This document shows, in pieces, positions 28,901 through 64,000 of a stretch of DNA of 64,000 nucleotides. The stretch lies in assembly GCA_965644315.1 (NCBI GenBank), contig CBFFRQ010000032.1, positions 682,001 to 746,000 on the forward strand, read 5' to 3'. Below the pieces are notes generated by a model. That model was not told the origin of the DNA. It saw nothing but the letters and a program-made list of their open reading frames with translations, and ran no database searches. Source of the DNA: Caecitellus pseudoparvulus. Taxonomy: Eukaryota > Protista > Bigyra: Bicosoecida. Positions within the stretch are counted from its first letter, which is position 1, and every line of letters starts with the position of its first letter. The position numbers and the translations under genes were made by a program.

Positions 28901-31900
28901 GCCAATGGTGGGAAGCACTTCCTTCTGGCATTGACGTTGTCAGCGTGACTGGGGGGCAACTTGCTCTCAGGGCGGAGCTGAACTTCGAAGAGGAGCATTC
29001 GTACGCCAACGGTACATTCCAGATTCACGAGTATGCCGTTAACGTCACTGTGTCTGATCCTTCTGGCGCCATTGACTGGGCGGTCCTTCGTGTGATTGTT
29101 GAGGATGTAAACGAAGCACCCCTCCTCAGCGACTCCTCCTTCTCAGTGTCGGAAGCCCTTGCCAACCAACCCACAGCTGCAACTCTTGGGCGCGTCGAAG
29201 CTACAGATCCAGACAACAATGGTGATAAACAGCTGACCTTTGCTATTGAGTCCGGAAACTTCGGTGGGGCCTTTGAAATTGACGTGTTCGAAGGTACCTT
29301 GGCTCTTGCAGCAGGGGCTCCGCTGGATTTCGAAAACATTACACAGTACGTCTTGAACATCTCTGTTGCAGACAATGCGTTGCAGGGAAGTCTGGCAGGG
29401 TACGCAACGGTTGTTGTCCAAGTTGAAGATGAGAACGACGTGCAGGTGGAGTCTCTGACTGTGAACACCCCCGATGGCTGCCTCAACACGGTTGGTGGGT
29501 CAACCATGACTTTGACGGGGAGCAACTTTGGCTGGACGAGTTGGGCCTTGAGTCACCCTGATGGGGCTGGAAGCTGGGTCAGTGCTAGTGAAAGCGTCAC
29601 TTTTGCGACGGTAGTCTTTCAGAAACATGACGATCTGGGGCATGCTGGCTCCATTGGGCAACCCACTGGCCCGCAGTATGTCGCGCCATGCACCATCTCC
29701 CCCAACCAGGAGCTGACGTGCACGGCACCCGCAGGTGTTGGTTCCCACTTGTACATGCGCTTGAACGTCACCAAAGGGGGCACGCTTCATTCGGTGTCGA
29801 AGCTCACGAGCCTGCTCGAGTTTTCATACTGCCCGCCAGAGCTGTCCACGGTTGAGACAAGCGCTGGGGCTGGAGAGGGAATTCCGACTGCTGGGACGGT
29901 GAGTGTGACCCTCCGTGGATCTGGTTTCGGGCCTGTGGACACTCAAGTCTCAGTACAGGCCTGGGCAGCAAGCCCCTGTGAACCTGGTGGCCTCCTCGCG
30001 TCTCCTCGACAGGGTGCAAGTGACACCGCGCCATACCGTGCCCAGGGCTGCCGCGTTTCAGTGGCTGACACTGACGTCACTTGCTCTGCAGCTCCGATTG
30101 GTGTGGGCAAGGGCCTATACTGGCGCGTTGAGGTGGCCGGCCTTGTGTCGAATGCTACGCAAGGGCAGGCTGCAAATGGCGCGGCTGCTTTCTCCCCGCC
30201 CTCAATCACGCAGGTCAGCCTTGGCTCACCGCTACCGCCAAATGTGACGCTCTTTAGCTTACCTTCCTCTGGCGATGTCCCCCTTGTCATTGAAGGCACA
30301 AACTTGGGTGTTGACGATGCCGCGTTGGATGCTGTGTGGCTCATGAACGCGACAGCATCGGCTGTGGTGCGTGCGGCACCCACCTCCACGCTCACACGAA
30401 GCACGCCGATCATGCTGCTGCGCCAGTGTGCTGTGGTGTCAGCACACACTAAGCTGCGGTGCTTTGTCCCTGCCGGCACTGGCACGGACCTGACGGTGGG
30501 CGTGCAGGTTGGCGGGCAGGTCTCCGGCGCCGCCCCAGCCGGTGTCCGCGTCGGCTACGCGCCGCCGTCTCTTGCCTACGTCGCAGGCAGTGCGCTGAAC
30601 AGTGGCCCCACAGCAGGGCGAGCACCCATTCAGATTGTTGGCACGAACCTTCCGCCGTCCACTCTGCTGCACACCGTGGCAGCTCCCTTCCCACTTGAGC
30701 AACCGTCTGTTTGTGAGGCAGGAAAAGACGTCCAAAGTGCAGTCCGCATTTCCGCAACCCCAGGCCAGCCTACAAGTGGCTCCCTTGCACTGGGAACCCC
30801 CCACATCATGGTGCAGTATGGCCCCGTGCCTGTGGCGGACCGTGCCTCCATCACGTGGAGCCCGGCCCCAGCCTCAGCCCCTGCCGCGACGGGTGACGTG
30901 GGTGTGCCCTCTGGGGCCGGCTCACAGGCCGGCGACGCCTTCGCTTTCCCCACCGCCTTCTCCGCAGGGCAGTGCACAGTGACTGCTCCAGGCACCGCCA
31001 TCACCTGCCAGTCTGTGCCCGGTGTGGGAGCGTGGCTGGCCTTCAAGGTGACTGTGGATGGGCAGAGTGCTCCTCACATGGTGGTGCGTGGCGGCTACGC
31101 TGCCCCCGTCGTGTTCTCGTACGATGGCCCCGGCGCAGACGGCAGCTCCACCCTGGGTGGCGATGCAGTGGTTGTGCGTGGGGAGAACTTTGGCCCTGCA
31201 GGCAGCGCCTTCATCACTGACGTCTCGTATGGTGTGGAGGGCCAGCCCCGTCGCTATGCTGCGGCGAACTGCACTGTGACGCAGGCGCATGTGGAGATGC
31301 AGTGTGCCACGGCTGTCGGGGCTGGGCAAGGCTTGAAGTGGCGGGTTGTCATTGGAGAGCAGGAGTCTGCAGCCCCCACCACCAAGTACGGCGTGCCCGT
31401 CGTGACTGGCCTGTCTGGGCCAGGCTCGGCGGACGCCAGCACAGGAGGTGGCGAGCGGGTGACCTTGACGGGTGTGAACTTTGGCCCCCCCCTGCCAGAA
31501 GGCATGCGCCAAGTGCCCGAAGGCGCCACTGACACGTCTGATCCCAGCATCGAAGTGCTGCCGTACCTGCAGTCCGTCACGTACGGCCCAACGGGTGTGG
31601 AGTACACTGCTGCCAACTGCACGGTGGCCTCCCACACGCAGGTAGACTGTGTGACTGTGCCACATGTGGGGCAGAACTTGCGGTGGATCGTGACGGTGGC
31701 GGGGCAGGCCTCAGCACCTTCTGGCGTGACCTCAAACACCGGCGCGCCCCGCATTCTGCTTGTTGTGGGCGACCAGCTCCCAACACAGGGCGGCAGCATC
31801 GTGGCGGTGTATGCGACCGGGTTGGGATACGGCGACGCAAACACTGTGCCTGTTCTTCGATTCGGCGCCTCCAACCACCTGCCGCTGACGCCCCGTGATC

Positions 31901-34900
31901 TCGCTGCACGAGGCATCCCAACTGGCCCTGTCCCTGACCCGCCGTCCTTCCCCTGGGCAGCAGGGCGTGGCAGCAGTGAGTCAGTGTTCGAAGCCTCGAC
32001 GCCGTCAGATGGATTTGAAGCGGTGGACAACTCTGGAATCAAGCTGCTGCACGTGCCAATGACGCCGGCACTTCTTGCTGCGCACTTCAATGACACCGAC
32101 GCTCCGCCGCAAGTTGGGGAAGTTGTGGACGTGCATCGCGTGCTGTACCTCGTGCCGGAATTGCAAGCAGAAGACCTGCTTCCAGGCCCGCCTTGCGGCC
32201 CTGGCCAAGCACGGGATCGCAGGATGCTGCAGGTGAGCGTCAAGAGCATCTCGGATGCAGCTGCTGCGATTGCTGGGTCCTCCTCCACGTCCTCCCAACA
32301 GGTTGAATCTCAGGAAGTTGAGTGGCACTACGAGGACATGGCTGCAGAGTTCCTGCTGGTTGCGACAAACCCGGAGAGCAGCTCCCCTGCAGACGCTCTC
32401 ATGGTGGAAGTGCGAGGCCGCTCATTCGGCCCCGCCCCGCAAGTGTCCCTCAGAAACGGAGACCCCATCAGCGTCGTCCTCGCGAACCACACGTACATCA
32501 AGTTCACGATGAGCGCAGGACCTGGGGACAGTGCGCCAGCCACAGAGGTGAATGTCATTCGCTCCCCGTGCCAAGCCCAACCTCTCTCTTTCAATACGTT
32601 GTCTCCCTCCATTAGCAACCTGGACAGCCCAGGGGGGAGCAGTGGCCACGACTACCGCACTGTCGGCGGCGGTATCTTGGAGATCACTGGGGAGCGCTTC
32701 TCAGTGGCCGCCATGTCGGTTGCCATTCTCACACCCAACATGGTTGGCGGTGTGGAAGAGATGGAGCCAGGCAACTGCCGCTTCAACGAAAGCGAGGCGG
32801 CCGTGCCACCTTATCCCACCTGGACCGGCATGCTTGTGGGCAGTGGCGGCACAAGCACGCTCCGGTGCGAAATGCCTGCTGGGCAAGGCACTGACTTGAC
32901 AGTGCGTGTCAGCTTGGGCCAAGTGGCCTCCCCAGACACCTCCTTGACTGTCGGCTACCGGCCTCCTACCGTGACGGGTTTGGTACCCCACAGCCCCTTG
33001 ATCCAAGGCTCTGCGCCTGTCGCCCCGCTGACCAACGTTTCCACAGTTGTGCACTTGCTGGGAGAAGACTTTGGCATGCCCAACTCTGCCCCGCGTTCCG
33101 TGCGCGTGGAGCTGGACGCGCTGCCGCGTGATGCTGCAGGGTCCATGGCAGATGACCAACTGGAATGGGCTGCTGACCATGAAGAACTGCGAGTGAATGT
33201 TCCCCGGGGAGTGGGAGATGCTACCCTGTTTCTGTCCGTCGCGGGCCAAGAGGGTTCGCTGCGCTTTTCGTACGCGTTCCCCGAGGTGTCCTTCGCCCCT
33301 CCCACTGGAGGCACCTCTGGCGCCGAGGCCATCACCATTCGAGGCGCTCACTTCGGTAGCCCAGGCATCGCTTCAGACAGGGGCCTGGACCCTGCCCTTG
33401 TCGCGCCGGTGCTGAGCGTGGGAACGTGGTCTGCAGCAGCATTAACCTGGACCGCAGACTCGGCCGTTTTCAACCTCCCAGCTGGCGAGGGAGCGAACTT
33501 GCCCCTGACCCTCACCGTCGGAGGCAAAACAACTCTCCCTCGTGACTTCAGCTACTTGCCCCCTCGCATTTCCGCATCCAGCATCTCTCCCCGCACTGAC
33601 ATCCCGACTGTAGGAGGCGTGAATGTGACTCTGCAGGGCACCAACTTTGGCTTGCGCCCTTGCATTCTGCTAGTTTCTTCAGGGGCTGGCTCTCCCACCG
33701 CGACGACCGCCGCCGCAAGCTTGCAGTTCCTGCAGTCACTTCGCCCCGCTTCGTCAAATGACCTGACGACTCCTGACCTGTCTTCTTGTGATGGGTGGCC
33801 AGCGTCGATGGAAGACGCCCGCCCGAACAGGGCCTGGCGCATCCCAGCCGATGCCCGCGAGGGTGGAGCCGAGCAGCACTTAGATGACATCTCCGATTTC
33901 CACATTCGGGTCCCTGCTGACCACGTTCATGTTGCAGAGCATGGCCGCATCATGTTCACCATGCCCCCTGTCCAGGGCTCTCCCAAGATTGCACTCGTGC
34001 TGGTGGGGGGGCAGTGGAGCGTGCTGCCAGCCGAAGTCGGCGCCATCGGCAACCTGCTGGCGCAGCGCATCGAGCCTGCAGCCCCCATTGCCACCGCGCT
34101 GTACCCCGCCGTCCTCCGAACGTCTACTTGCACGGACGTCACAGTGTATGGTGAAAACTTTGGAACAAGTGCTTATGGCTCGCTAGTGTACACGCACTCT
34201 GACGGGCGGCGTGTTGTGACGTCTTGTGAGCGGCTCGCTGAGCCAGCCACAGCCATGCCCACGGGCTTGGAGCTTCAGCAAGCACTGCGCACCTTGGAGC
34301 GAACGGGTGCGCTGCCTGTCCGCAGAGCAGATGCCCCTCCCCTGCCCGTCTTGAGTTCACACAGTGCCTTCAAGTGCCAAGTGCGAGGGGGCATTGGCCA
34401 GGAAGTGGCTTTCGTCGTGCAGGTGCCGGGGCATGGCAGTGCCCAAGCAGACCCTGCTGACATCGTTGACGGCACCGTTCCCGCCAGCATCGCTGCTTGG
34501 TCAGGCCTCACGGCGTCGTTCTCTGCCCCCACTCTGAACACCATTGTGCCTCGCACGCCTGATGCTGCGGGGGACCGCATGCTGCTGTTGGGAGACAACT
34601 ATGGTGTCTTCCGGCCCAACCTCGAAGACATGGAAGATGGGCAGTGCTACGTCGACGCTGAGCCATGGCTTGCATTAAACATCTCAGCCTCCCCATCTGT
34701 AGCGCTCGTGCACGACTTTGCCTTGTCCCCCATGTTCCAAGTGGACATGCAGGCGCTGCTTTCTGAGGAAGCAGGTCGCTCAGCACTGCGGGCTGCGCTG
34801 CAAGCCTCTGGAGCGGCCCTGAACACATCCCAGTACCTGGCTGATGTGCTGTCCAGCACCTTTACTCCGCCGCCCACTGCAGAGGTGAACGGAACAAGTG

Positions 34901-37398
34901 CAAGTCGTCGCCTGCAGGCGGCTCCTGAACTGCAGCAGCACCTTCTGGAAGGGCTTGTGCAGGAGTGTGAAGGAGAGCCTGTTCTCCTCCCACCCACGAC
35001 AGTGCCAAGGGACGGTGAACCCATCCGCGAGACGCCGACCATATCCTGCACCACGCCGTCGCTGCGCGTTGGCCACAAAATCTTGCTTGTGACCACGAAC
35101 AACGTCACAGCACAGTGGCCTTCGGCCTTCCTACGCGTCGAGTGTGGGGAGGGGCAATACGGCCAAGACGGAGAGGTGTGTGAAGACTGCCCTCAAGGCA
35201 CGGTGTGTGATGGCGGCCTTGCTGAGCCTCGCTCAGATGCAGGGTGGTGGAAGGTGAACATGTCTTCCGCGGCAGATTCTGGCGCATGTCCTGCCAGCCG
35301 TGCACACCGAAGTGCCTGCCCCCTTGCCTTGCCTTGTGAGCCAAGGGACGCGTGCCTGGGAGACAACGTGTGCGCAGGCGCCTACACTGGTGAGCGGTGT
35401 GCCTCGTGCGCGCCTCAGTTCTACCGCTTGGACGGCCAGTGCATTGAGTGCCCTGACAACGCCTGGTTGCTCATCTTGGCCTTCGTGCTGGCAGCGCTCG
35501 TCATGGCAGGCATCGCGTACATCCTTTCCAAGAAGGCAGTGAACCTCATCGTCATCGGCATCGGCGTGGACTACTTCCAGGCACTGGCCATCTTCGTTCG
35601 CACAGGCGTACAGTGGCCTGCCCAGGTCGTTGCCCTGTACCGCATCCTCTCCGCGTTTTCGTTCAACCTTGACTTGACGGCTCCTGAGTGCACTCTGGAG
35701 CAGTTCAGCTACGACCGCAAGTTCATGGGCATCATGCTGCTGCCAGTTGGCGCCGCGGCCATCTTTGGGCTCATGCACATTGGCAAGTACTTGTACAAGC
35801 GCTGCATCTTGGGCCGCCGCAAGGGCTTGCATGCCCACCTCCCCATGCTCATTTCCGTCATGGCCATGGCCATGTACTACCTGTACCTGTACCTCACCCG
35901 CACCACCCTGGACATTTTCAACTGCAACCCCACTCAGCCTCCTGACGGCAAAGAGTACCTTGAGGTCGTTTTTGTTCCGTGCTGGGAGGAAGGCGGCATG
36001 CAGATGGCCATGCTGCCTTGGGCTTCCCTTGGCCTCATTTTCTACGTCATCGGGTACCCCGCCGTGGTTACCTTCATCTTGCGCAAGAACAAGGACATGG
36101 TCGTCGAGGACCAGCTGCTCCGCGCGCGCGCCACGGGCGAAGACCGCGCGACCAACCCTCGCTGCTATGAGTTCCGCAAGAAGTACGCTCGCCTGTACTT
36201 CCGCTTCAAGCCAGAGTTTGCGTCGTACTGGATCGTCCTGCTCATCGCCCGCAAGGGCCTGCTGGCCTTCACCGCGCTCATGTTCCGGCGCAACTCCACA
36301 TTCCAGCTGTCCTTCATGCTGCTGGTGTTCTTCGTCGCCCTGCTGTTCCAGATGGTGAACAGCCCCTTCATGTCCCCGAAGGACGTGCAGAATGTCATCA
36401 AGCAGCACGCAGCAACGTCGGATGGTGTGGACCAAAGCGCCCAGGCCAGCCTGGAGGTTGCCTCGCGTGCAGCGCGCACGAAAGCACACCGCATGACCCT
36501 GAACAGCAAGAGCGCCAGGGCGTACGCTGCCAACCGGTCCATGGGCACTGCTATTGCGCTGGTGGGGTCAGCGCTGCTCAGCAGCTCATCCGGCATCATG
36601 GAGCTCATCACCGACTACAACTTCCTGGAGTCGGTGTTCTTGGTGTGCCCCATCCTCATTGCTCTGGCAGGCATCATGTTTGAGAGCGACCGCTTTGCAG
36701 ATGGCGCCAATGCCACAGAGCGCACGGCCATCACCGTCATCGTGCTCTTCATCATCATCACATCCATCCTGTATCTGGCCTGCGTGTTTGTCGTGGACAT
36801 GCGTTATCAGCTGGCTGTGCAGCGCGCCCGTGACCAGCTCATGGCAGGAACCAAGAAGGGCAAGAAGGGCAAGAAGGGCAAGAAGGGTGGCTCTTCAAGT
36901 GGTGAGGGCAAGGGCCTGGATGCCGCCGGCATGCGCAAGCTGCTGGACGATGCCCGCAAGCTGGACGGTGACACGGACCAGACCGTCACCACCGCCAACA
37001 ACCCCATGATGCTGCAGAAGAAGGCCGACCGCAGCAAGGAGCTCGCAGGCCCCGTGGACAACATGACCTTCCTTGCCAAGGTCAAAGAGTGGGAAGCGGA
37101 GATGGAGGCAGGCGCGACGTACGGCGATGTCGTGGACCTGCTGTCCGCCCAACAACGCGGGCTGCACGAGCTGCTCAAATGGCTGGCCGCTGAACGTGAG
37201 GCCCGGCGCAAGCTGGCCTCCGAGAGCCGTGCCGAAGTCCAAGGTACCTCCCGCAAGGTGGCCTCCAAGCGCATGCGCAAGGGCAAGCGGCAGATTGGAC
37301 AGGCCAACGTTCGGCGGTCCATTGCTGCCAACATGAACCCTTTCGCTGGCACGCGCGCAGGTAAGATCGCCGCGTTCAAGAAACGTGGAAAGCCGTGA
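22902..37398 (+). CDS. Giant (about 4700 aa) cell-surface receptor: signal peptide, EGF-like, C-type lectin, Cys-rich GCC2/GCC3-like repeats, about 10 cadherin repeats, IPT/TIG repeats, Cys-rich stalk and 9-TM domain ('nonagonal cadherin' type); four 5' introns (about 23030-23099, 23137-23225, 23320-23391, 23480-23556)
   Basis: The signal MIRAMSSLTVILLALAALVARA splices in frame into the 4590-aa ORF. Motifs: CSGHGTC (EGF), CWIGL...WASGQPD...C (CTLD), CPAGxY repeats, ten DxNxAP-type linkers with LDFE/LNHE, many G.NFG IPT units, and nine hydrophobic helices at 35460-36800. Confidence 0.88.
31179..31723 (+). repeat. Near-identical long inverted repeat, copy 1 (partner 63456-64000)
   Basis: Base-by-base comparison with the reverse complement of 63456-64000 gives 545 bp, 3 mismatches and no indels. 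Confidence 0.97.
36853..36888 (+). repeat. (AAGAAGGGC)x4 coding microrepeat giving KKGKKGKKGKKG
   Basis: Seen directly; the last unit ends in T. Confidence 0.9.
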
Positions 37399-37729
37399 AC
37401 TTGAAGCTCTTGTGACTTGGGCTGTGCTGGAGAACCGCCGGGGCTTCGTGGGCCAACCCCCGTCCCTCGCCACCGTTGGCGTCTTGAGTGTGATTTGCGT
37501 GTCTTGCTGTCACCTGCTGATGTGGTCCTTGCGCAGTGTGCGCGGAGGGTCCCCTCGGCACATTTTTTGTCGCGTTCAACAAAAAATACACTTCTCTGTC
37601 CTGGTATCCCCGGCGTTGGCGTGCCGCAGTCCCGTGATCTCTGCCCACGAGCTCTCCGCTGCCGCGCGCAAGCCACGCCTGGCCGGGCTTCGCTCGGGGC
37701 GTGTTAGCGAGCAGCATACGCCTGCCACC

Positions 37730-41063: not shown

Positions 41064-41075
41064 GGGTCCCGTCTG

Positions 41076-41085: not shown

Positions 41086-41091
41086 ACACAC

Positions 41092-53777: not shown

Positions 53778-54112
53778 GCCTGGCCGAAGGAGCCTCGCGC
53801 TGGCTCGCAGGTCCGCACACGTCGTCCCTGCGCCATGCAGTGCCACAACAAGCGGACCCTTGCTGAAGGAGCACCGTGCATCGGGCACTGTGAAATGCGC
53901 TCTTGAATTTCCTGTGTGTGTTGTTTTTGTTATATCAGTCGAGTCTGCGACGGAGTGGTCCAATAGCTTCGAGGAGAATGCATCACGCTCTTTCTCTTCT
54001 GTTACGCAAGTCTGCTCCCAGTTGAGCAAATCCTTCTCGCCGACAATACAAAAGAACCACTCCTCCAGCCATTCTACGCTCCATCAGTATAGAGCTTTCC
54101 TGGTGCGGCACC

Positions 54113-54791
54113 ATGCTTGGCACCGTGCTTGCTCGGCTGAGGCGTGCAGCATTGGGGCTGGGCACTGCTGCCACTTTCACTCTTGCTCAGGCTACGCAAG
54201 AGCCAGCGCGTGCGCAGCGTGGGGGCGAGGTGCCTGACGTGCAACATGATGGGCAGTGTCACTGTGGGGCGGTGCAGTTCAAAGTGCTCGCACCTGCGGA
54301 CATCGTCGTGTGGCACTGCAACTGCAGTATCTGCCACATGAAACAAGTGCGGAAATCACATCTCGTCAGCGTATCGCCTTCGTCTGCTTTGAGCACGCCC
54401 TTGCATTGACCCATGGCAGAACCACCACTTTGTCGTACCGGAGAAAAACTTCGAGCTCGTATCAGGGGCCAGTGTGCTGACGACTTACAGGTTCAACACA
54501 GGCGTGGCCCAGCACAAGTTCTGCTCAGTGTGTGGCGTGCAAGCTTGTGCGTGCCCCAGGTTGCCTGCGCTGCGCAGGCGCATACGACTGCACAGAGCTT
54601 CATCTTCGTGCATTTGACCCTCGAGTGCAGTCTACATTCCCCGCAGTAACCCTGACGGTGTGGCAGTCACAGCCAACTGCATCACTTCCCCCACGCTGGC
54701 GTCCCGCACCGAGCGGTACTTCGACGGCGAGAACTGGGAGGACTTCATTGAAGGCAGCGGCATCCAGGAGCACTCCAAACCCAGGAGCTGA
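54113..54791 (+). CDS. CENP-V / glutathione-dependent formaldehyde-activating (GFA) domain protein; 2 introns
   Basis: HDGQCHCGAVQF...CNCSICHMKQ/NHHFVVP...TTYRFNTGVAQHKFCSVCGVQA/FYIPRSNPDG...FDGENWE. Confidence 0.9.
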
Positions 54792-54805
54792 CAGCACGAG
54801 CTTGC

Positions 54806-54813
54806 AATGCATT
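54806..54813. terminator. Candidate bidirectional 3'-end signal, palindrome AATGCATT, between convergent stop codons
   Basis: Lies in the 25-bp spacer between the GFA and SRSF1-like stops. Function is inferred. Confidence 0.45.
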
Positions 54814-54816
54814 TGC

Positions 54817-55806
54817 TCACTCCTGGCCCTGCGCTGGGGCGGCGCCCTCCGACTCCGCCGCGGGGGGGGGGCCCTCACCCCCACCGGATGCCTGGGCAGG
54901 GGCAGCGCCCTCCACGACACCTGCTGGGGGGGCATGGCCCTCACCCTGCACCTGGTCGCCAGGGTGGCCATCTCCATGAGCGTGTGGGGGGCCATGTGTG
55001 TGATCGGCGGGGCCCGCGTCGCCGCTGCCATGGGTGGGCGGGGGACCGTAACGGCCGGGGCTGCCACTGCGGCCACGGGGACCACTGTCACCCTGGGGCG
55101 CAAAGGGCACCTCTGGGTCTGCGCGGATCTTCGCCTCGTCCCCGAAGCGGTTCTTGAAGATGGCGCCGTCCAGCTTAGGCAGGGCTGCTTCGAAGTCAGA
55201 CTTGCTGTGGAAGTCCACCAGACCCACGTCAGGGCCGATCATCTTGGCGAAGTTGACGTCGCCGGCGGTGCGGGCGAAGTCCTTCAGGTCCTGCCATGAC
55301 GTCCGGTCAGGGAGGCCAGAGATGCGGATGCCCGTGTCGCTGGGCGGCCGCCCGTGGAAGCCGCCACGGGACGCAGAGCCACCACGGTCAAAGCGGTCCC
55401 GCCCGCCCCGTGACAGCTCCACACGAATACGCCCCCCGTCAAAGTTGATGCCGTCTCGATCGTACACGGCGTCTGCAAGGGAGGGGGCCGTGCAGGTACG
55501 TGCGGAATTCGAGGCAGCAGCACTGACGCAGTAAGCAGCGCTGCCTATGGCTGCTAGTCGCGCACCCCCAGCACCTCCGGCACAGCACACAGCCAAGAGG
55601 GCTACCAAAGCTTATCACTCCGGGTTCCATGGCCTGCACGCACCTTCGGCGTCCCGGATGTCGCGGAACTCGACAAAAGCAAACGCTGGGCCTCGCGGGG
55701 GGCGCTTGATGTCAATGCGGCCAGGGCGGTAGCGGTAAAACATGTCCTCCAGTTCTGCCTCCCGGACGTCGCCAGGCAAGTTGCCGATGTAAACCTTCAC
55801 TGACAT
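54817..55806 (-). CDS. SRSF1/ASF-SF2-like two-RRM splicing factor; intron 55473-55643
   Basis: [35 protein letters not shown] and the pseudo-RRM signature SWQDLKD. Confidence 0.88.
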
Positions 55807-56096
55807 GGCGGATGCAAGGGGCCAGCGCGGTGGTGGCAGCAGTGGGTCCTTGTTGGCGTGGCGTTGGCTCAAACTCCGAGGCGCGAAGCGTCGGGCAGGG
55901 TGCACGGGAGAGGGGTGGGGGCATTTCAGCGCTAGGAAAGTGGCCTCGTGCCAAATGTGCTGCTGCCTGGTCACTCCCGTGAGGGTGGATGCGGCGCCCC
56001 GCCCACCACTGTCCAGACCTCTGCGGGAAGCTGCATTGCTAGCAGGGCACCACTGCCCGCCCATCACGCACGTGCAGAGCTAGGGCACTGTGTGCC

Positions 56097-57506
56097 CTAG
56101 CTCAAGTCGTCAAATTCATCCCGGGGCGCTGCAGTGCTGCCCACAGGCGCGGCACTGCCACCGCCGCCCGCAATGCGCGGTGCATCTCGCCCATACACCT
56201 TGGGCAGGGATGACACCACGCCGCCAATGTGCGAGGCTTCGTAGGGGAGGTAGATGAAGCGCGTGCCAGAGGCGCTGGCGGATGCCACCTGCTGCAGCAG
56301 CTGGTTGTACCGCTGCCCAATCATGTACTCTGTCTGGGAGCAGTTGTCAGCGACGATGGCGTCAGCGACGGCGTCCAGGGCGGCCTTCTCGGCGCGGGCC
56401 ACCTCCACTTGGGCCTGTGCAGAGCCCTCAGAGCGTTTGCGAGTGGCCTCCTGCGTTGCCACACCCATGTTGATGCGGGCCATCTTCTCGCCCTCCGACA
56501 CCAGCCGGACCGCGGCCTTGTTGCCTTCAGCACGGATGAACTCGGCTCGACGGCGGCGCTCAGCGATCATCTGCGCCTTCATGGACATGGAGGTGGCGCC
56601 CTTAGGGGTCATGTCCTGCAGCTCGATGCGGTGCACCTTCAAACCCCAGCCCTCAAAGGTGGCGCCGAAGTTCCGCTTCATGTGCAGGTTGATGCTCTCC
56701 TGGGAGCACAGAGCTTCCTGGAAGGTCATGCCACCGAAGACCTCCTTCAGCTGGGTCTGGGCGGTGTTGGACACGGCAGTGGTCAAGTCTTCCACTTCGT
56801 AGATGGCTTTGCGCACATCCTGAATGGAGTAGTACATGACGCAGTTCACCTGCAGCATCACGGTGTCGCGAGTGTACACCTCTTGGGGCAAGAAGTTGAA
56901 CACGCTTTCCCGAAGGTCCACACGGTAGTCGTTGATGATTTCATCCCTTAACTGGCCCTGGTTGATGGAGCTGCAAAGGGGACGAGGCAGTGGCAAGGTG
57001 CTCAGACTGCGCGTCACGTTTGCCAGCAATGGCCCGCCAGCGCCACGAGGTGGCACGCACGGCCACCCAGACAGCCACAGGGGACACAAAAGTAGTACAG
57101 GAGGGAGCAGCTGGACGGCAAGCAGCTGGGCGGTGCGCAGGCACACCAACGTCAAGGCGCAGGAGTTGTCGGGAAAGTTCCTCGACAAGCCCGCCCTGCA
57201 GCCGTAGCAGCAGCGCAAGCTGTCGACCCAAAGCACCAACAACTGCTTGGACTATGCACCAAATGTCACTCGTCGTCACCCAGCTACGTACGTGCGGCGC
57301 CAAGAGAAGTTGCGGGGGGCCTCCACGCAAGGCACCACGCAGTGCCAGCCCGGCGCAAGAATCCGGTCAAACCGCCCAAAGCGCTCGATGGAGATGCTCT
57401 CCGCCTGCTGCACAATGTAAATGGTGCTACGTAGAATGAGCACGACGATGCCGATGAACACGATGGCGCCAATCACGCCACCTGCGACGGCTCCTCCATC
57501 AGCCAT
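56097..57506 (-). CDS. SPFH/band-7 (stomatin-like) membrane protein; long intron about 56971-57291
   Basis: N-terminal TM, IVQQAE...IERFGRF..IL.PGWH..VP, VDLRE....PQEVYTRD, KA.YEVEDL and QM.AERRRRA...AEG.K. Confidence 0.9.
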
Positions 57507-57909
57507 GGTGCTGGTGCGGGCGGCACCCGCGCGGGGACAGACTGCAGGCACGCAGGGGCTGCCTACGGCCAAGCACGTGCCTGGCTACACAATGAACGAT
57601 CCGGCTGGGGCCTGGGATAGTGGGTGTATGGTTTTTGACCAGCCATGGTGCGATTGCCCGTCAGAGGGCGTGCTCAGCCGCGGCACGCCGGCCAACGCAG
57701 GTGAAATGCTGGGTTGCATTTTCATTGCAGCGAGGGACAAGGGGCAAAGTGGTGCACTGGGGGTGCATCTCCTCGCCCCTTGCCCGACAGCGATGGCCCC
57801 ACCCGGCCTCCTCGACTCACGGTCGACTCGGCGGGGAAGGGTCTGGGTCACGTCACAAGAAGTGAGCCGCACACTGCGGCATGATAGGCCTCTCAAGGGG
57901 GTTCAGCAC

Positions 57910-60900
57910 TCACTGTGGCTTAGCTGCTCCGCCTCTATCCACGGGGTCAGAGGCAGCAGCGGCGGCGGCGGCGGCCAGCTCAGGCAGCCTACTCTCGCGG
58001 CGCAGCATCGGGTTCGCGCTGGCCACTGGCTTCGCCGAAAAACTTGCTCGCCTGGCGGCAGGGTCCTGTGGCTTTGGAGCTGCACCTTGAGCCCGCACAG
58101 CCTTGGCTGCAGCAGGGGTGCCCACTGCACCCTTGGCTGCGGCAGCGCCTGGCCCGGCAGATGCAGCAGCGGCGGGCTGGGACACCTTGATGCGTTTGTC
58201 ATCATCCTTACCCTCGGCTTCGTGGGGGAAGAGTTGCTCACGCAAGTCCAGGACAGCAGACGTCTTGATGCCCATGGCCTCACGTGCCTGGCGCTGCTGC
58301 ATCACGGACGTCAGCAAGCGGGCAATGGTGCGGGTCTGGTGACCTGCAAGCTCCATGAGGTCTTCGTGTGGGGTATCTGCGTTGACGGTGCGGAACCAGT
58401 CTGCCAGCTGGTTCACGACGTCCACTTCGGTGCCGTCAGTGGCCTCAAAGCGCTTGGCCTTGTGGCCCTTGGTCAGGAGTGGGTTGTTCGCCATCTCAAT
58501 GGGTCCTCCCGTCTCCTCACCCTCAAAGCCATCGGCAGCCTTCAGCAGCTTGGTCACCGCAGCATCAGTGCGAGCATCTGCCTTGGCATCGGCAGTCTTC
58601 TTGCTCTCAACATCATCGGGTTTCTTGGTGGAGGACTTGGCAGCCAGCTGGCTGCGCAGGTGTTCCACATGCACCTGGTGGCGCATGTCCACGATGAACA
58701 CCGCCACCAAGTACACCAGGGACACGGCGATGAGGAGGGCAACGACGACGACGAGGGCTTCCCGTTCGCCAGCGTACACGTCTGACTGCAGGCGCTCCGA
58801 GGAGAACATCAACCCGGCCAGCGCCACAAGGATGCTGCTCGTCAGCAGCGCCGTCTCCAGGAAGTTGTAGCTCAGCATAACCTCATGCACCCAGCCCTGC
58901 GCCACTGCAGCGGTGGAGCCCGCCAGAGCCATGGCGTTCCCCAGTGTGCGCTGCTTTGCGAACATGCGCGCACGGGTGACGTTCAGCGTCATGCGGCGAG
59001 TCTTGGCCTTGGCCTTGCTGCGGGCGTCGGACATCTCGGCACGCACCCGGGCAGCCATGGCGGATGTGGAGGACGCGTGTGCCTCAAGCACGGCACGCAC
59101 ATCTCCAGGGGACATGAAGGGCGAGTGGTGCATGTGCAGGATCAAGGCAGCAAAGAACACCAGCAGCATGAAGGCGATCTGGAACTCGGCGTTGCGCCGG
59201 AACATGAGCGCGGTGAAAGCCAGCAGTCCCTTGCGAGCCAGAAGGACGCAGATCCAGTACGACGCGTATATGGGCTTAAAGCGGAAATACAGGCGGGAGT
59301 ACTTCTTGCGGAAATCGTAGCAGCGAGGGTTGGTCGCGCGGTCCTCGCCCGTGGCGCGCGCGCGGAGCAGCTGGTCCTCAATGACCATGTCTCGGTGCTT
59401 GCGCAGGAGGTACGTCACACCTGCAGGGAAACCAATGACGTACAGCAGCAGGCCAATGACGGCCCACGGCAGCATGGCCATCTGCACGCCGCCTTCCTCC
59501 CAGCAGGGCACGAAGACAATCTCCAAGTACGTCTTGCCGTCGCTGGGCTCGGTGGGGTTGCAGTTGAAAACGTCCAGGGTGGTGCGGGTGAGGTACAGGT
59601 ACAGGTAGTACATGGTCATGGCCATGACAGCGACCATGCGTGGCGTGTGGGTGTTCAGGCCCTTGCGGCGGCCCAGGATGCAGCGCTTGTACAAGTACAG
59701 GATGCAGTGCAGCGCGAAGAAGATCAACGCTGCCCCCACCGGCAGCAGCATGACGCCAATGACTTTGGTATCTGCTGTGATGGCATCGAATGTGCACTCC
59801 GGCGCAGTTAGGTTCAGATTCAAGTTGAAAGCCGAGAGGTACTGGAACATGGCCAGCAGCGCAGGCGGCCACGCAACCTGTGTCCTGGAGAAGATGGACA
59901 GTGCTTGGAAGTAGTCGATGGCAACGCCTGCCACGATGAGGTTCACTCGCTTGCTGTGCATGACGTAGCCAAGGGCTGCGAGGGCCAGTGCTGCCACGAC
60001 GAAGATGACGATGAGCATCCAGGCGTTGTCGGGGCACTCAATGCACTCGCCATCAAAGCGGTAGTGGCCGTCACTGCACAAGGCGCAACGCTCACCTCGG
60101 TACGGCGCAGAGCAAGTGTTGTTCCCAGTGCAGGCGTCCTGAGGCTGGCAAGGTAGCGACTGGGGGCAAGCACCACGGTGCTGGCGCTCGGTAGGGCACA
60201 CACCCTGCGCAGTGCTGGTGTTCTGACCCCAGAACCCCACGTTGGCCTGGGGCTCTGCAGCGCCACCTTCACAGCGCATGCCTGCGGGACACTCCAAGCA
60301 CAGCTCGCCAGCCTGGCCGTAGTAGCCATCGGCGCAATCCACGCGCAGGAAGCGCGAGCCCCGCGTGGAGGTCTGCCCAGCCAGTGTCATGGTCATGGAC
60401 TTGAAACCGCTGCGCATGCTGGGGGAGGAGCAGGCGATGAAGGCGTCGGTTTCTTGTCCGCCAGGTGGTCGGAGCGCCGCATCTGCGCACTGCACCGTGA
60501 CACTGTCCTCATGCACGGTTGCAGTCCAGGCACCGCCCTCTTGCTCAGCAAGGGTGAGAGTCGGGTCGCTCAGCTCAGCGGCTTGCAGCATGCGGGAGCC
60601 AGGGGCAGCACGCGGCACGATGGTGATGGAGGAGGAGTTCAGAACCACGCCATCTCGCAAGAACATGGGGGACAGGTCAAAGTCGTGGTGGAACTGCACC
60701 TGGACGTTGCTTGTCTGGAAAGGCCCAAAGGCTCGCTCACCAGGCAGCAGGCAGGTGCCATCCACGCCGAGGGCGGCATACTGCTCTGGCGTCTTGCGGA
60801 AGACGCCAAAGTTCTCTCCGCGGATGTTCAATGTGTCCCCATGCGCGGCAGGAATCGGCGGGAAGAGGAACGTGACACTGGGCTCTAGGAAGGAGAAGTT

Positions 60901-63900
60901 CACTCCCGCCTGAGGAGCCAGCCCGGAAGCCACAGGAGGGGCGACAAGCTCCTGAGGCGGCACCTTGGAGCTGATGTGCCCCGGCACTTGCACAACCACT
61001 GCGAGGTCCTGTCCGAAACCACCACCGATGGTGCAAGACACGACGTCCAGGGCGGAGGCATCTGGGAAATCCGTCAAGTCCACAGCTGACACATCACCAT
61101 CGTTCCTCAAACACGGCGCAGTGACGGTGGTCGTGGCGTTCAACGCATAGACCACTTGCACCTCGGCAGCATCGCCAAAGTGCTCCCCGATGACGAACAC
61201 GTCTGTGCACTCAGACGTCATGCCGGAGGAGGGGGAGATGGCCATGGGCATGGGGTGCAGCTGTGCAATGGTGAGGGAGTCCACGGCAGCCTGAGCTGCG
61301 CTGGTGCTGGCCACGCTGGTTTGCTCCCCTGCCAACACCACCAGAGCTTTGGGTGACCCCTGGAAGGCAGGCATCATGAACTCGACCTCAGTGTGACTCC
61401 ACCGCACCATGTCCACGCCTGCCACTGCGATGTGGCCGTCAGCTTCCACCAGGTGGGCCTCGTCGCCACCCTCAACATCAGGTGCAATGACACGTGATGC
61501 GTTCACAGGCCAAATGGCTCCGAAGCCAGTGCTGCTGAGCACCCTGGAGAGGCTGCCCAGAACTGCGTCACCAACAGTCTCGTCAGCTGCAGAGCCGTCA
61601 GTGTGGCCCGTGGAGATGAGCAGAACTTTGGGGGTGAGTCCGAAATTGGCACCCGTGATGGTGACGGCCACACCGCCCTTGGTAGGGGCGCTGCGCTGCG
61701 AGAGGCTGGCCACGGTGGGGGGCAAGTATGCCAAGGTGGAGGCGGTGCCCAGAGCGGAGGCTTGGCCTGCAACGGTCACGCGCACAGGCAAGCCAGCGCC
61801 TTCGCCAGGAGGCACCGTGCAGGTGAGTTGGGTGTCAGTCCAGGTGGAAGGGTCGACGAGGGGGCAAGGGGCGCCACCCACCGTGACTTGGGGACGGATG
61901 ATGCTCAGCACAGCTGCGTTGCCTTCAGACAGGGAAGGGCTGCCGAAGCCAGAGCCAGAGAGTGTGATGGTGCCGCCGGATGTCGGCACGGAGCCCGACA
62001 CGGCCGTGATGGTAGGTGCTGCATAGGTGACTCGGGGAGGCACAAAGCCGATGTCCAAGTCCCTGATGTCAGTCAGGCGCTGGGTGTCTGTGCGATCCTT
62101 GTAGAAGTAGTGCACCTCCAAGTCTGCCCCGACGCCCACGAAAGGCGGGATGGTTACGCTGAGCGTGTCGTGCCCTGACCCCGAGCCGGACGAAGGCGTC
62201 AAGTACCGCTCCAAGGCACGGGCAGCCACAGGGCTCCAGAAGACACGCTGGTCCACTGCACCGAAGTCACGCCCTGTCAGGGTGACACTGCCACCGCTCG
62301 TGGTCAGGGCCTGCGGGGCAACGGCATTGGCGAAGGGGAAGCGGTACTGCAAGTACAAGATGCCAGGCTGGGGGGGCAAGGACCCGACTGAGATGCGCAA
62401 GGGTTCAAAGCCTTGCCCAGGCGGCAGAGTGCAGGAGATGACGGTGACATTGGCGCTGAGTGGGGACACAGCCGCGTCTGTGGCAGGATCAAACGCACAC
62501 TCTTCGTCCCCCACCGTGATGGTCACCAGCGCCCACTGTGCAGGGGAGCTGCCGACATTCTGCGCCTCCAGAGTGATGACTTCACCGCCCACTGTGGGGA
62601 AAGTGACACCGTCAAATGCGTCACGGTTGCTCAAGGAGGGGGAGAAGTCAGTGAATGCAGTGGGCAGACTGCTGCGCCCACCTGCACGCACAACGACGCT
62701 GCCGTCAAGGCTGGTCAGCTCCACCTGCACGCGTGTGTGGCTGGCTGACACTGCAGGCACTGGAGCGCCATTCACCTCCACGATGGGGGCGTGGCCGAAC
62801 CCCGTGCCGAAGAGTGTCAGTTCGTTGCCTCCGCCTGCGATGGGCACAGACAGAACTTCCTCGATGTCCGGACCAGCGTAGATATACGAGAACGGGCCTT
62901 CGGGCGCCCCTGCCGACGACAACTCCGCTGACACACCTCCAGTGGTAGACCCTGTGCCGACTTGCACTGGGATGCGCTCTGCAAGCTGATTGGGGTGGGA
63001 CGGCGACGACACGTCCAAGCTTCCCACTGCAGAGTCGAACATGCCCTGGTCCAGCTCAGGCAGCGTCACGAAGAACTCCTGCACAACAAGGCTTTCGCCT
63101 GCGGCAGGGAGGGTGGACGGGGCGGAATGCAGGGGTCCGCCATTCACTGCCAGCCAAGACGTGGAGAAGTTGGCCAGCACCAGTTGGGCGACGCCAGAAG
63201 CGTCCGGGAGCGTGCGGGAGATTGCGACACTGTCCACCCATGCTGAACGACCCAAGTCGGCCTCGCGTGCAGCCAAGACGTCGTTGCGAGACAGGGCAGT
63301 CAGGCGACGGTTCCCAAATTCCACGAACGGAGACGAGGCGGCGGAGCCGAAGCCCACCCCCGTCGCATACACTGCCACGATGCTGCCGCCTTGTGTGGCA
63401 CCTTGCGTGGGCGTGACCAGCAACAGGGACGGACGTTCAGTGCTGGACGTGGCATCAGAAGGTGCTGAGGCCTGCCCCGCCACAGTCACGATCCACCGCA
63501 AGTTCTGCCCCACATGTGGCACAGTCACACAGTCTACCTGCGTGTGGGAGGCCACCGTGCAGTTGGCAGCAGTGTACTCCACGCCCGTTGGGCCGTACGT
63601 GACGGACTGCAGGTACGGCAGCACTTCGATGCTGGGATCAGACGTGTCAGTGGCGCCTTCGGGCACTTGGCGCATGCCTTCTGGCAGGGGGGGGCCAAAG
63701 TTCACACCCGTCAAGGTCACCCGCTCGCCACCTCCTGTGCTGGCGTCCGCCGAGCCTGGCCCAGACAGGCCAGTCACGACGGGCACGCCGTACTTGGTGG
63801 TGGGGGCTGCAGACTCCTGCTCTCCAATGACAACCCGCCACTTCAAGCCTTGCCCAGCCCCGACGGCCGTGGCACACTGCATCTCCACATGCGCCTGCGT

Positions 63901-64000
63901 CACAGTGCAGTTCGCCGCAGCATAGCGACGGGGCTGGCCCTCCACACCATACGAGACGTCAGTGATGAAGGCGCTGCCTGCAGGGCCAAAGTTCTCCCCA
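57910..64000 (-). CDS. Second giant IPT/TIG-repeat 9-TM surface receptor, paralog of 22902-37398; 5' part lies beyond the window
   Basis: The frame is open to the window edge. It has IPT/TIG repeats, a Cys-rich stalk and a 9-TM region highly similar to the first receptor (YYLYLYLTRTTLD.FNCNPT, EDQLLRARATGEDRATNPRCY.FRKKY). Confidence 0.88.
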   Translation of the reverse strand, partial: GENFGPAGSAFITDVSYGVEGQPRRYAAANCTVTQAHVEMQCATAVGAGQGLKWRVVIGEQESAAPTTKYGVPVVTGLSGPGSADASTGGGERVTLTGVNFGPPLPEGMRQVPEGATDTSDPSIEVLPYLQSVTYGPTGVEYTAANCTVASHTQVDCVTVPHVGQNLRWIVTVAGQASAPSDATSSTERPSLLLVTPTQGATQGGSIVAVYATGVGFGSAASSPFVEFGNRRLTALSRNDVLAAREADLGRSAWVDSVAISRTLPDASGVAQLVLANFSTSWLAVNGGPLHSAPSTLPAAGESLVVQEFFVTLPELDQGMFDSAVGSLDVSSPSHPNQLAERIPVQVGTGSTTGGVSAELSSAGAPEGPFSYIYAGPDIEEVLSVPIAGGGNELTLFGTGFGHAPIVEVNGAPVPAVSASHTRVQVELTSLDGSVVVRAGGRSSLPTAFTDFSPSLSNRDAFDGVTFPTVGGEVITLEAQNVGSSPAQWALVTITVGDEECAFDPATDAAVSPLSANVTVISCTLPPGQGFEPLRISVGSLPPQPGILYLQYRFPFANAVAPQALTTSGGSVTLTGRDFGAVDQRVFWSPVAARALERYLTPSSGSGSGHDTLSVTIPPFVGVGADLEVHYFYKDRTDTQRLTDIRDLDIGFVPPRVTYAAPTITAVSGSVPTSGGTITLSGSGFGSPSLSEGNAAVLSIIRPQVTVGGAPCPLVDPSTWTDTQLTCTVPPGEGAGLPVRVTVAGQASALGTASTLAYLPPTVASLSQRSAPTKGGVAVTITGANFGLTPKVLLISTGHTDGSAADETVGDAVLGSLSRVLSSTGFGAIWPVNASRVIAPDVEGGDEAHLVEADGHIAVAGVDMVRWSHTEVEFMMPAFQGSPKALVVLAGEQTSVASTSAAQAAVDSLTIAQLHPMPMAISPSSGMTSECTDVFVIGEHFGDAAEVQVVYALNATTTVTAPCLRNDGDVSAVDLTDFPDASALDVVSCTIGGGFGQDLAVVVQVPGHISSKVPPQELVAPPVASGLAPQAGVNFSFLEPSVTFLFPPIPAAHGDTLNIRGENFGVFRKTPEQYAALGVDGTCLLPGERAFGPFQTSNVQVQFHHDFDLSPMFLRDGVVLNSSSITIVPRAAPGSRMLQAAELSDPTLTLAEQEGGAWTATVHEDSVTVQCADAALRPPGGQETDAFIACSSPSMRSGFKSMTMTLAGQTSTRGSRFLRVDCADGYYGQAGELCLECPAGMRCEGGAAEPQANVGFWGQNTSTAQGVCPTERQHRGACPQSLPCQPQDACTGNNTCSAPYRGERCALCSDGHYRFDGECIECPDNAWMLIVIFVVAALALAALGYVMHSKRVNLIVAGVAIDYFQALSIFSRTQVAWPPALLAMFQYLSAFNLNLNLTAPECTFDAITADTKVIGVMLLPVGAALIFFALHCILYLYKRCILGRRKGLNTHTPRMVAVMAMTMYYLYLYLTRTTLDVFNCNPTEPSDGKTYLEIVFVPCWEEGGVQMAMLPWAVIGLLLYVIGFPAGVTYLLRKHRDMVIEDQLLRARATGEDRATNPRCYDFRKKYSRLYFRFKPIYASYWICVLLARKGLLAFTALMFRRNAEFQIAFMLLVFFAALILHMHHSPFMSPGDVRAVLEAHASSTSAMAARVRAEMSDARSKAKAKTRRMTLNVTRARMFAKQRTLGNAMALAGSTAAVAQGWVHEVMLSYNFLETALLTSSILVALAGLMFSSERLQSDVYAGEREALVVVVALLIAVSLVYLVAVFIVDMRHQVHVEHLRSQLAAKSSTKKPDDVESKKTADAKADARTDAAVTKLLKAADGFEGEETGGPIEMANNPLLTKGHKAKRFEATDGTEVDVVNQLADWFRTVNADTPHEDLMELAGHQTRTIARLLTSVMQQRQAREAMGIKTSAVLDLREQLFPHEAEGKDDDKRIKVSQPAAAASAGPGAAAAKGAVGTPAAAKAVRAQGAAPKPQDPAARRASFSAKPVASANPMLRRESRLPELAAAAAAAASDPVDRGGAAKPQ
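63456..64000 (-). repeat. Near-identical long inverted repeat, copy 2 (partner 31179-31723); truncated by the window edge
   Basis: The reverse complement matches 31179-31723 with 3 synonymous mismatches. Confidence 0.97.

What the first reader, a model, noticed from the sequence alone, without database searches (positions are those of the whole stretch)
31179..64000. Two convergent giant receptor genes share a near-identical in-frame cassette forming an inverted repeat: gene conversion or a 32-kb inversion that swaps C-terminal halves
Seen: 31179-31723 (+) and 63456-64000 (-) match over 545 bp with 3 synonymous mismatches, and the match runs off the window edge. Identity ends abruptly at ...ASAPS, after which the two ectodomains are strongly diverged. 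The block is read in the same frame in both genes. Inference: such identity inside old paralogs indicates recent gene conversion or segmental exchange. Because the genes face each other, a crossover in the block would invert 31724-63455 and fuse each N-terminal half in frame to the other gene's IPT/stalk/9-TM/tail half, leaving the enclosed genes intact. This is a possible shufflon-like diversification system for a protist adhesion or prey-recognition receptor. No recombinase gene is visible, so host homologous recombination would be required.
Basis: partly seen in the sequence, partly recalled or inferred. Interest (0 to 1): 0.85.

Follow-up and report, generated by a model that had tools for sequence, protein, structure and literature searches.

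The report
Gene-conversion islands in two giant receptors
Two facing giant cadherin-lectin receptor genes of a marine protist are old, strongly diverged paralogs apart from three in-frame stretches kept almost identical by gene conversion; the proposed inversion that would swap their halves is possible but nothing here shows it.

Summary
Gene A (open frame 23488-37395, +) and gene B (57913 to 7,454 bases past the window edge, -) are single-ORF genes of about 4,500 codons. They encode EGF, C-type lectin, cadherin and IPT/TIG domains and about 9 TM segments.

They share three collinear, in-frame, near-identical tracts:
- T1, 27519-28709: 1,191 bp, 97.6% identical.
- T2, 30453-30588: 136 bp, the first 117 identical.
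- T3, 30799-31739: 941 bp.

Everywhere else the ectodomains are 45-51% identical in DNA. dS is 0.025-0.10 in the tracts and 1.4 or more (saturated) outside them. GC3 is raised in the tracts. The tract proteins are only 24-43% identical to other family members. The tracts occur nowhere else in the genome.

In four public runs, including a marine metagenome, each long tract is a separate contig at about twice the depth of its flanks, in three of the runs clearly, and A-type and B-type flanks both join it. An assembly artefact is therefore excluded.

Best reading: islands of ectopic gene conversion between inverted paralogs. The inversion or 'shufflon-like' idea stays untested, because only k-mer contigs were available. 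It also lacks a recombinase, short recombination sites and a dedicated cassette; the enclosed 20 kb holds housekeeping genes. This is a known kind of event in an unusual gene family.

The parts
23488..37395 (+). Gene A: one open frame of 4,636 codons (first ATG at 23641). It encodes EGF, C-type lectin, many cadherin repeats and IPT/TIG domains, then about 9 predicted TM segments and a tail.
   Evidence: Stop-to-stop ORF; Pfam Cadherin E=1.8e-65, TIG 6e-26, Lectin_C 2.9e-15; hydropathy.
57913..64000 (-). Gene B, the 3' part that lies in the window. The open frame has 4,514 codons and continues to window-equivalent 71454 (G000:C32:753454). Same architecture as A; it converges on A.
   Evidence: ORF on window plus L003; Pfam; A/B protein alignment.
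27519..28709 (+). Tract T1 in gene A: 1,191 bp, 97.6% identical to B at G000:C32:748410-749600 (-). 29 mismatches (16 synonymous, 13 not), denser towards the 3' end. It ends at the end of a cadherin domain.
   Evidence: blastn; mismatch list; dS 0.051; Pfam on the tract; twice the flank depth in runs X1, X5 and X3, near flank depth in low-depth X13.
30453..30588 (+). Tract T2 in gene A: 136 bp, first 117 bp identical to B at C32:746585-746720 (-), with 6 mismatches in the last 19 bp.
   Evidence: separate double-depth contigs 30453-30569 (X3) and 30453-30563 (X5).
30799..31739 (+). Tract T3 in gene A: 941 bp. There are 7 mismatches in the first 925 bp (6 synonymous) and 7 in the last 16 bp. 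It ends at the end of an IPT/TIG domain.
   Evidence: dS 0.025; double-depth contig in four runs.
63440..64000 (-). Tract T3 in gene B, the part inside the window. It continues to window-equivalent 64380.
35421..36332 (+). TM-core region of A, 78% identical in DNA to B 59153-60064 (-). dS is 0.63 and GC3 0.85. It is a conserved family module, not a recent tract: other paralogs match it at 65-79%.
   Evidence: (I2, I4, I5).
37396..57912 (.). Interval between the two gene ends. It holds housekeeping genes (glucosidase II beta-like, TM9SF/EMP70, queuine tRNA-ribosyltransferase, Band 7) and five ORFs without a Pfam match. No recombinase or transposase was found.
   Evidence: Pfam on ten ORFs.

Best explanation
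A and B are old paralogs (amino-acid identity about 29-44% outside the tracts and the TM core, synonymous sites saturated) that lie tail to tail about 20 kb apart. Three homologous segments of their ectodomains are kept nearly identical by ectopic (interlocus) gene conversion without crossover. A break in one copy is repaired from the other, heteroduplex is confined to the stretch that is still similar, and it stops where the flanks are too diverged. This gives sharp edges. The most economical history is that the islands are what remains of homogenisation since the duplication. The rest of the ectodomain escaped and diverged, possibly under selection for different binding specificities. The last exchanges are recent, on the scale of within-species diversity. 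Shown here: the tracts, their boundaries, the drop in dS, the raised GC3, and two copies in independent samples. Inferred: the mechanism, its continuity since the duplication, and any selective reason.
For: - Three gap-free, collinear, in-frame tracts of 95.6-97.6% identity over their full lengths (T3 99.2% up to 31723) lie inside 45-51% identical coding DNA.
- dS is 0.051 (T1), 0.10 (T2) and 0.025 (T3), against 1.4-4.9 in every other ectodomain and tail segment.
- The tract proteins are only 24-43% identical to eight other family genes, no more conserved than the spacers. Protein constraint therefore cannot explain the identity.
- The tracts exist only in A and B.
- GC3 is 0.75 in the tracts, against 0.63 in A's flanks (p=5e-10) and 0.70 in B's (p=0.007). 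GC-biased conversion predicts this.
- In runs X1, X5 and X3 the T1 and T3 contigs are separate contigs at about twice the depth of their flanks: 153 against 75-87, 57 against 30, and 36 against 19 for T1. In low-depth X13 only T3 stands above its flanks. Loose ends at the tract edges are B's flanks exactly.
- The sites listed where X1's collapsed T1 contig differs from reference A (13 rows) all carry B's letter. At 31724 the single-copy contig running into A's right flank reads B's letter in all four runs. These are paralog-matching polymorphisms.
- Identical runs of 117-281 bp remain, enough to seed further exchange.
Against: - No sister species or ortholog was available, so the classic test (the tract tree groups paralogs while the flank tree groups orthologs) could not be run. 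Donor and direction are unknown.
- Keeping islands identical for as long as it takes the flanks to saturate needs steady conversion. A later cassette transfer is not excluded.
- T1 carries 13 non-synonymous differences (dN/dS about 0.3), so it is not perfectly homogenised.
- Collapsed contigs hide how different the A and B copies are in the other strains.
Confidence: 0.85

Rival explanations
1. Homologous recombination with crossover in T1, T2 or T3 inverts the 32-38 kb between the copies and swaps the distal parts of the two receptors in frame. This could be a standing inversion polymorphism or a reversible switch. The tracts would be both product and substrate of it.
For: The geometry is right: inverted, in-frame tracts at 95.6-97.6% identity overall, with identical runs up to 281 bp. 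The genes inside the interval would stay intact. From my own knowledge, inverted repeats of about 1 kb do mediate inversions elsewhere, for example F8 int1h. One low-depth contig in X13 (1,398 nt) has 40 nt of T2, then 213 unaligned letters (the length of B's spacer; A's is 219), then T3 and 204 nt of A's right flank.
Against: No read or contig here proves a second orientation. The X13 contig comes from about 3x per-copy depth. There the A spacer is not covered between 30733 and 30798, so the k-mer graph would join B's spacer to A's flank through the collapsed tract by itself. No recombinase is present and the interval holds housekeeping genes. A's variable segments have lower GC3 than B's on both sides of each tract, as expected if each gene has kept its own segments for a long time. 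No other assembly of the locus could be found.
Confidence: 0.15
2. A dedicated, programmed diversification system like a bacterial shufflon, selected to generate receptor chimeras.
For: Only the geometry, plus unverified notes from this scan that other inverted paralog pairs in the same genome share in-frame identical tracts.
Against: No site-specific recombinase and no short recombination sites were found. The invertible segment would carry several housekeeping genes. Among ten family genes compared, only A and B share partial tracts.
Confidence: 0.05
3. Assembly or polishing artefact: one sequence was written into both genes.
For: None beyond the general risk with repeats.
Against: In X1, X5 and X3 the long tracts have twice the depth of their flanks, and both A-type and B-type junctions are present. 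The two copies differ at 49 sites. Both stay in frame inside long ORFs.
Confidence: 0.02
4. A recent one-off transfer of domain cassettes between the genes, or from a lost third copy, by a route other than homology-driven conversion, followed by ordinary divergence.
For: The 3' ends of T1 and T3 fall at domain ends, cadherin and IPT/TIG respectively. The flanks are too diverged to seed conversion today.
Against: The three separate tracts all sit at exactly homologous, collinear positions without indels. There is no third copy in the genome. Divergence rises gradually towards the 3' edge of T1, as with overlapping conversion events.
Confidence: 0.06

Closest known systems
Interlocus gene conversion between inverted paralogs (arms of human Y-chromosome palindromes, PMC8600007; conversion islands in duplicated genes generally)
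   Same: Inverted copies on one chromosome; near-identity that includes synonymous sites; sharp edges; raised GC; maintenance without crossover.
   Different: Here the identity covers three short in-frame islands (0.1-1.2 kb) inside otherwise saturated giant coding sequences, not whole arms. The organism is a marine protist and the genes encode cadherin-lectin-IPT receptors.
Inversions by homologous recombination between inverted repeats (FLNA/EMD 48-kb inversion; F8 int1h, about 1 kb repeats); recalled from my own knowledge, not checked here
   Same: Inverted repeats of about 1 kb at high identity, tens of kb apart, could recombine and invert the interval.
   Different: In those cases both orientations have been observed. 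Here none was. Here the repeats are coding and in frame, so the product would be two chimeric genes rather than a disrupted one.
Campylobacter fetus sap S-layer switching (RecA-dependent inversion between conserved regions of opposed homologs) and the R64 shufflon (Rci recombinase, pilV C-terminal swapping); my own knowledge
   Same: Opposed homologs share a conserved block, and an inversion exchanges which variable part is joined to the expressed part.
   Different: sap uses a 5' conserved block and one movable promoter. The shufflon uses 19-bp sites and a dedicated recombinase. Neither feature is present here, and the interval here is ordinary chromosome.
Giant cadherin-domain proteins of stramenopiles (Cafeteria, Phytophthora) and animal CELSR/Flamingo
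   Same: Cadherin repeats with EGF and lectin modules, followed by a multi-pass membrane domain. The best database relatives are Cafeteria, Phytophthora and metagenomic proteins. In Cafeteria burkhardae, proteins with cadherin and lectin domains are reported as upregulated in stationary phase (PMC7852580).
   Different: Identity to those is only 24-43%. The C-terminal module of about 9 TM segments has no Pfam match, in particular no 7tm_2 or GPS. It is therefore not an adhesion GPCR by the tests possible here.

Membership tests
Ectopic (interlocus) gene conversion tract | Sharply bounded stretch of near-identity inside otherwise diverged paralogs, at homologous positions | tested here: met
   Three gap-free collinear tracts of 95.6-97.6% identity against 45-51% flanks.
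Ectopic (interlocus) gene conversion tract | Synonymous divergence drops inside the tract | tested here: met
   dS 0.025-0.10 inside, 1.4-4.9 outside.
Ectopic (interlocus) gene conversion tract | Not explained by protein conservation or by assembly | tested here: met
   Tract proteins are 24-43% identical to other paralogs. Tract contigs at twice the flank depth with both kinds of flank in X1, X5 and X3; X13 too shallow to show it clearly.
Ectopic (interlocus) gene conversion tract | GC enrichment of converted DNA | tested here: met
   GC3 0.75 against 0.63 (A flanks) and 0.70 (B flanks), p=5e-10 and 0.007. This is consistent with conversion but not specific to it.
Ectopic (interlocus) gene conversion tract | Phylogenetic incongruence against orthologs of a related species | not testable with these tools
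   No close relative was found in any collection; the best homologs are 24-43% identical.
Shufflon or other site-specific invertible system | Dedicated recombinase gene at the locus | tested here: not met
   Pfam on ten ORFs of the interval finds housekeeping families only; five ORFs have no match.
Shufflon or other site-specific invertible system | Short specific inverted recombination sites bounding cassettes that hold only alternative gene ends | tested here: not met
   The repeats are 136-1,191 bp of coding sequence. The interval holds about 20 kb of unrelated genes.
Shufflon or other site-specific invertible system | Both orientations present in a population of cells | not testable with these tools
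   Only Logan contigs (k-mer graph) were available, and they break at the tract edges.
Inversion polymorphism by recombination between inverted repeats | Inverted repeats of high identity and sufficient length | tested here: met
   Tracts of 941 and 1,191 bp at 97.6-98.5%, with identical runs up to 281 bp.
Inversion polymorphism by recombination between inverted repeats | Recombinant junctions (A left flank, tract, B right flank) observed | tested here: inconclusive
   One X13 contig has the length arithmetic of B spacer, T3, A flank. It comes from about 3x per-copy depth and can be a graph artefact.
Cadherin superfamily | Repeated cadherin domains in an extracellular region | tested here: met
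   PF00028 E=1.8e-65 (A) and 7.2e-77 (B), several stretches each.
Adhesion GPCR of the CELSR/Flamingo type | 7tm_2 domain with GAIN/GPS next to the membrane | tested here: not met
   No Pfam match in the C-terminal 665 residues; about 9 hydrophobic segments.

The most novel reading that the evidence does not exclude
The three tracts are working recombination substrates. Crossovers in T1, T2 or T3 reversibly invert the 32-38 kb between the copies. The four variable segments of the two receptors could then be recombined in frame into up to eight configurations of the pair, a homologous-recombination-driven receptor shuffling device in a free-living marine protist. It may be one of several such inverted pairs in this genome; scan notes say so, but they are unverified.
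Probability: 0.07. Interest if true: 0.8.

Novelty: new member of a known kind. Interest (0 to 1): 0.35.

Why it matters
The locus is a clean case of mosaic concerted evolution. Defined modules of a giant adhesion-type receptor (one block that includes a cadherin domain, one that includes an IPT/TIG domain) are kept identical between two paralogs while the rest diverges to saturation. This marks the modules that the two receptors must share. It also gives a natural substrate for measuring ectopic recombination in a little-known marine protist. If long reads showed both orientations, the locus would be a rare eukaryotic example of in-frame receptor shuffling by inversion. As it stands, it is an ordinary mechanism in an unusual gene family.

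Tried and rejected
1. Two loose ends in run X5 (at 27564 and 30409) looked like a third partner. They match contig C44, but the shared stretch with gene A is only 18-20 nt and blastn finds no similarity. These are chance matches and were dropped.

2. The joints 27262>30453 and 30579>30799 are not deletions. They are B's inter-tract contigs touching the tracts by 24-40 letters, and the contig lengths (1,752 and about 273) fit B's spacers of 1,689 and 213 nt.

3. I looked for independent assemblies of the locus to phase the flanks. Two protein searches, a protein scan and an exact 39-mer scan of metagenome contigs gave nothing closer than 43% identity. Those tools may withhold records of this genome.

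4. I planned a family-wide survey of 18 further paralogs. Whole-gene DNA searches of A and of B's first 9.4 kb cover the rest for this pair.

5. I tested whether the C68 gene pair is the '36-kb inverted pair with a homogenised 5' end' of scan note s1-661143. The 5' 2.2 kb of that gene matches only its C20 twin and a 69% paralog.

6. The TM-core similarity (78%) was considered as a fourth tract and rejected. Its dS is 0.63, its GC3 is 0.85, and other paralogs match it at 65-79%.
Full report
**Place and genes.** The window is G000:C32:682001-746000 of a 30.6-Mb, 215-contig genome. I joined the window to DNA fetched beyond its end and read it stop to stop. Two giant uninterrupted frames face each other:
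- Gene A, 23488-37395 (+), 4,636 codons, first ATG at 23641.
- Gene B, from window-equivalent 71454 down to 57913 (-), 4,514 codons (C32:739913-753454).

Pfam finds EGF, C-type lectin, many cadherin repeats and IPT/TIG domains in both. The C-terminal 665 residues have no Pfam match and carry about nine hydrophobic segments. At least 20 other open frames of about 2,500-8,700 codons in the genome share that C-terminal module. B is by far A's closest relative: 51% identity there, against 43% or less for the others.

**The observation.** The inverted repeat is real: arms 31179-31739 and 63440-64000, 561 nt, 98% complementary. The frame is shared, and identity stops after ...ASAPS in both proteins.

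Beyond the window edge the tract (T3) runs on to A 30799 / B 64380. It is 941 bp long with 14 mismatches, seven of them in the last 16 bp.

- T1, A 27519-28709 with C32:748410-749600: 1,191 bp, 29 mismatches, no gap.
- T2, A 30453-30588 with C32:746585-746720: 136 bp, the first 117 identical.

All three are collinear and in frame. Between and around them the coding DNA is 45-51% identical.

**Is it an artefact?** No. I laid the contigs of four public runs on 27001-32800: three under different organism labels and one marine metagenome.
- The T1 and T3 contigs are separate contigs, and in X1, X5 and X3 their depth is about twice that of their single-copy neighbours. In X1, T1 is at 153 against 75-87 and T3 at 161 against 76-80. 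In X5 the figures are 57 and 59 against 30-35. In X3 they are 36 and 42 against 16-19. X13 is too shallow (about 4-7) to show the doubling clearly: T3 stands above its flanks, T1 does not.
- The contigs break at the same places as the blastn boundaries.
- The letters hanging off the tract edges are exactly gene B's flanks.
- X1 differs from the reference at ten sites in A's private 1.8-kb spacer, so it is not simply the reference haplotype.

The two-copy tracts with these boundaries therefore exist in several samples, including the sea.

**What made them.** Nei-Gojobori estimates by segment give the following.

| Segment | dS |
|---|---|
| T1 | 0.051 |
| T2 | 0.10 |
| T3 | 0.025 |
| Every other ectodomain or tail segment | 1.4-4.9 (saturated) |
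| TM core | 0.63 |

Outside the tracts and the TM core, dN is 0.6-0.8 and amino-acid identity 29-44%.

- Protein constraint cannot be the cause. The tract proteins are only 24-43% identical to eight other family genes, no better than the spacers.
- The tract DNA occurs nowhere else in the genome, so there is no third donor and no mobile element.
- GC3 is 0.75 in the tracts, against 0.63 in A's other ectodomain segments (p=5e-10) and 0.70 in B's (p=0.007). GC-biased conversion predicts this. It also probably explains the 'patchwork composition' that the scan noted in gene A (s1-669428).
- Divergence within T1 rises towards its 3' edge, from 99% to 91%, as expected from overlapping events with different ends.
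- The 3' ends of T1 and T3 coincide with the ends of a cadherin domain and an IPT/TIG domain.
- The sites listed where X1's collapsed T1 contig departs from reference A (13 rows) all carry B's letter. At 31724 the single-copy contig that continues into A's right flank reads B's letter in all four runs. These are paralog-matching polymorphisms, typical of ongoing exchange.

My reading is islands of concerted evolution. Ectopic, non-crossover gene conversion has kept three modules alike since an old inverted duplication, while the remainder diverged beyond the reach of recombination. Perfect runs of 117-281 bp remain, so exchange can continue. Contigs from two further gene pairs (C68/C20 and C32:807k/C65) are about 98% identical over their full lengths. 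If these are haplotypes, within-species diversity is about 2%. That is similar to the 0.8-2.4% between the tract copies, so the last homogenisation would be recent on that scale.

**The inversion idea.** A crossover in T3 would invert 31740-63439, and one in T1 would invert 28710-66409. Each would give two in-frame chimeras and leave the enclosed genes whole. With three tracts, eight configurations are reachable in principle.

Nothing here shows that this happens. All available runs are k-mer contigs that end at the tract edges and cannot link a left flank to a right flank.

One X13 contig of 1,398 nt fits 40 nt of T2, then 213 unaligned letters, then T3 and 204 nt of A's right flank. The 213 letters match the length of B's spacer; A's is 219. 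That looks recombinant. But at about 3x per-copy depth, with A's spacer uncovered from 30733 to 30798, the graph would produce this path by itself. I count it as inconclusive.

Three points argue against a dedicated switch:
- The interval holds glucosidase II beta, TM9SF, queuine tRNA-ribosyltransferase, a Band 7 protein and five ORFs with no Pfam match, but no recombinase.
- The repeats are long coding tracts, not short sites.
- Only A and B, among ten family genes compared all against all, share partial tracts.

In addition, A's variable segments have lower GC3 than B's on both sides of each tract (0.62/0.60/0.51/0.66 against 0.71/0.65/0.65/0.72). That weakly suggests each gene has kept its own segments for a long time.

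I found no independent assembly of the locus. A low-frequency inversion polymorphism remains plausible, as for any 1-kb inverted repeat. A programmed system is unlikely.

**Organism.** The enclosed TM9SF frame is 100% identical to an NCBI protein filed under Symbiodinium sp. KB8. The next hit is 60%, and the best named relatives, at about 45-48%, are stramenopiles such as a bicosoecid. The giant genes' best relatives are Cafeteria, Phytophthora and metagenomic proteins at 24-43%. The stretch is held by marine metagenomes and by runs under six organism labels. A compact 30.6-Mb genome with giant intron-free frames does not fit a dinoflagellate. I take it for an unidentified marine heterotrophic protist, possibly stramenopile-related, that travels with such cultures. 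This is inference.

**Comparison and verdict.** This works like interlocus gene conversion between inverted paralogs, as in Y-chromosome palindrome arms (PMC8600007), and it meets every defining feature I could test. It does not meet the testable features of a shufflon. The scan's notes list four other inverted paralog pairs with identical in-frame tracts elsewhere in this genome. I could not verify them. If they hold, the habit would be genome-wide and worth a separate look.

Conversion is supported at 0.85. Inversion is unproven. This is a new member of a known kind, of moderate interest.

Noticed in passing
L011-L013 (G000:C68:858906-881155) vs L016-L018 (C20:25945-48188); L024-L025 (C32:807005-823629) vs L026-L027 (C65:1265-17388): Two further giant family genes each have a twin on another contig that is 98.1% or 97.7% identical over the whole 16-20 kb. 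These are either unmerged haplotypes (heterozygosity of about 2%) or very recent segmental duplications.
   Followed up: partly
window 45839-47281 (-): The TM9SF/EMP70 frame is 100% identical to an NCBI protein labelled Symbiodinium sp. KB8, and the next best hit is 60%. The 30.6-Mb genome is probably a protist co-cultured with, or mislabelled as, that dinoflagellate.
   Followed up: no
window 35401-37395 (+) and 57913-60064 (-): The C-terminal module of about 9 TM segments has no Pfam match and is shared by at least 20 open frames of about 2,500-8,700 codons across the genome. It is an uncharacterised membrane domain that anchors a large family of cadherin/IPT proteins.
   Followed up: partly
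window 30540-31943, run X13: A low-depth contig seems to join B's T2-T3 spacer (by length: 213 nt, against 219 in A) through T3 to A's right flank. It is probably a k-mer-graph artefact, but it is the one datum that could hint at a recombinant form.
   Followed up: partly
window 22014-22351: A direct repeat of 155 nt in two copies (87% identical, spacing 183) lies about 1.1 kb upstream of gene A's open frame.
   Followed up: no
window 29801-32800: Marine metatranscriptome runs hold part of this stretch (X15 holds 36% of the sampled words). The receptor gene or genes therefore seem to be transcribed in the sea.
   Followed up: no
other pieces of the same genome (scan notes s1-661196, s1-661143, s1-636089, s1-641930): First-stage notes describe four other inverted paralog pairs that share near-identical in-frame tracts (367 bp, a 5' end, 1.34 kb, and a constant/variable mosaic). 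If real, conversion islands between inverted receptor paralogs are a recurrent feature of this genome.
   Followed up: no
window 23488-23700 and window-equivalent 71454 downward: Neither giant frame shows a hydrophobic signal peptide at its first ATG. A short upstream exon may be missing from both gene models.
   Followed up: no
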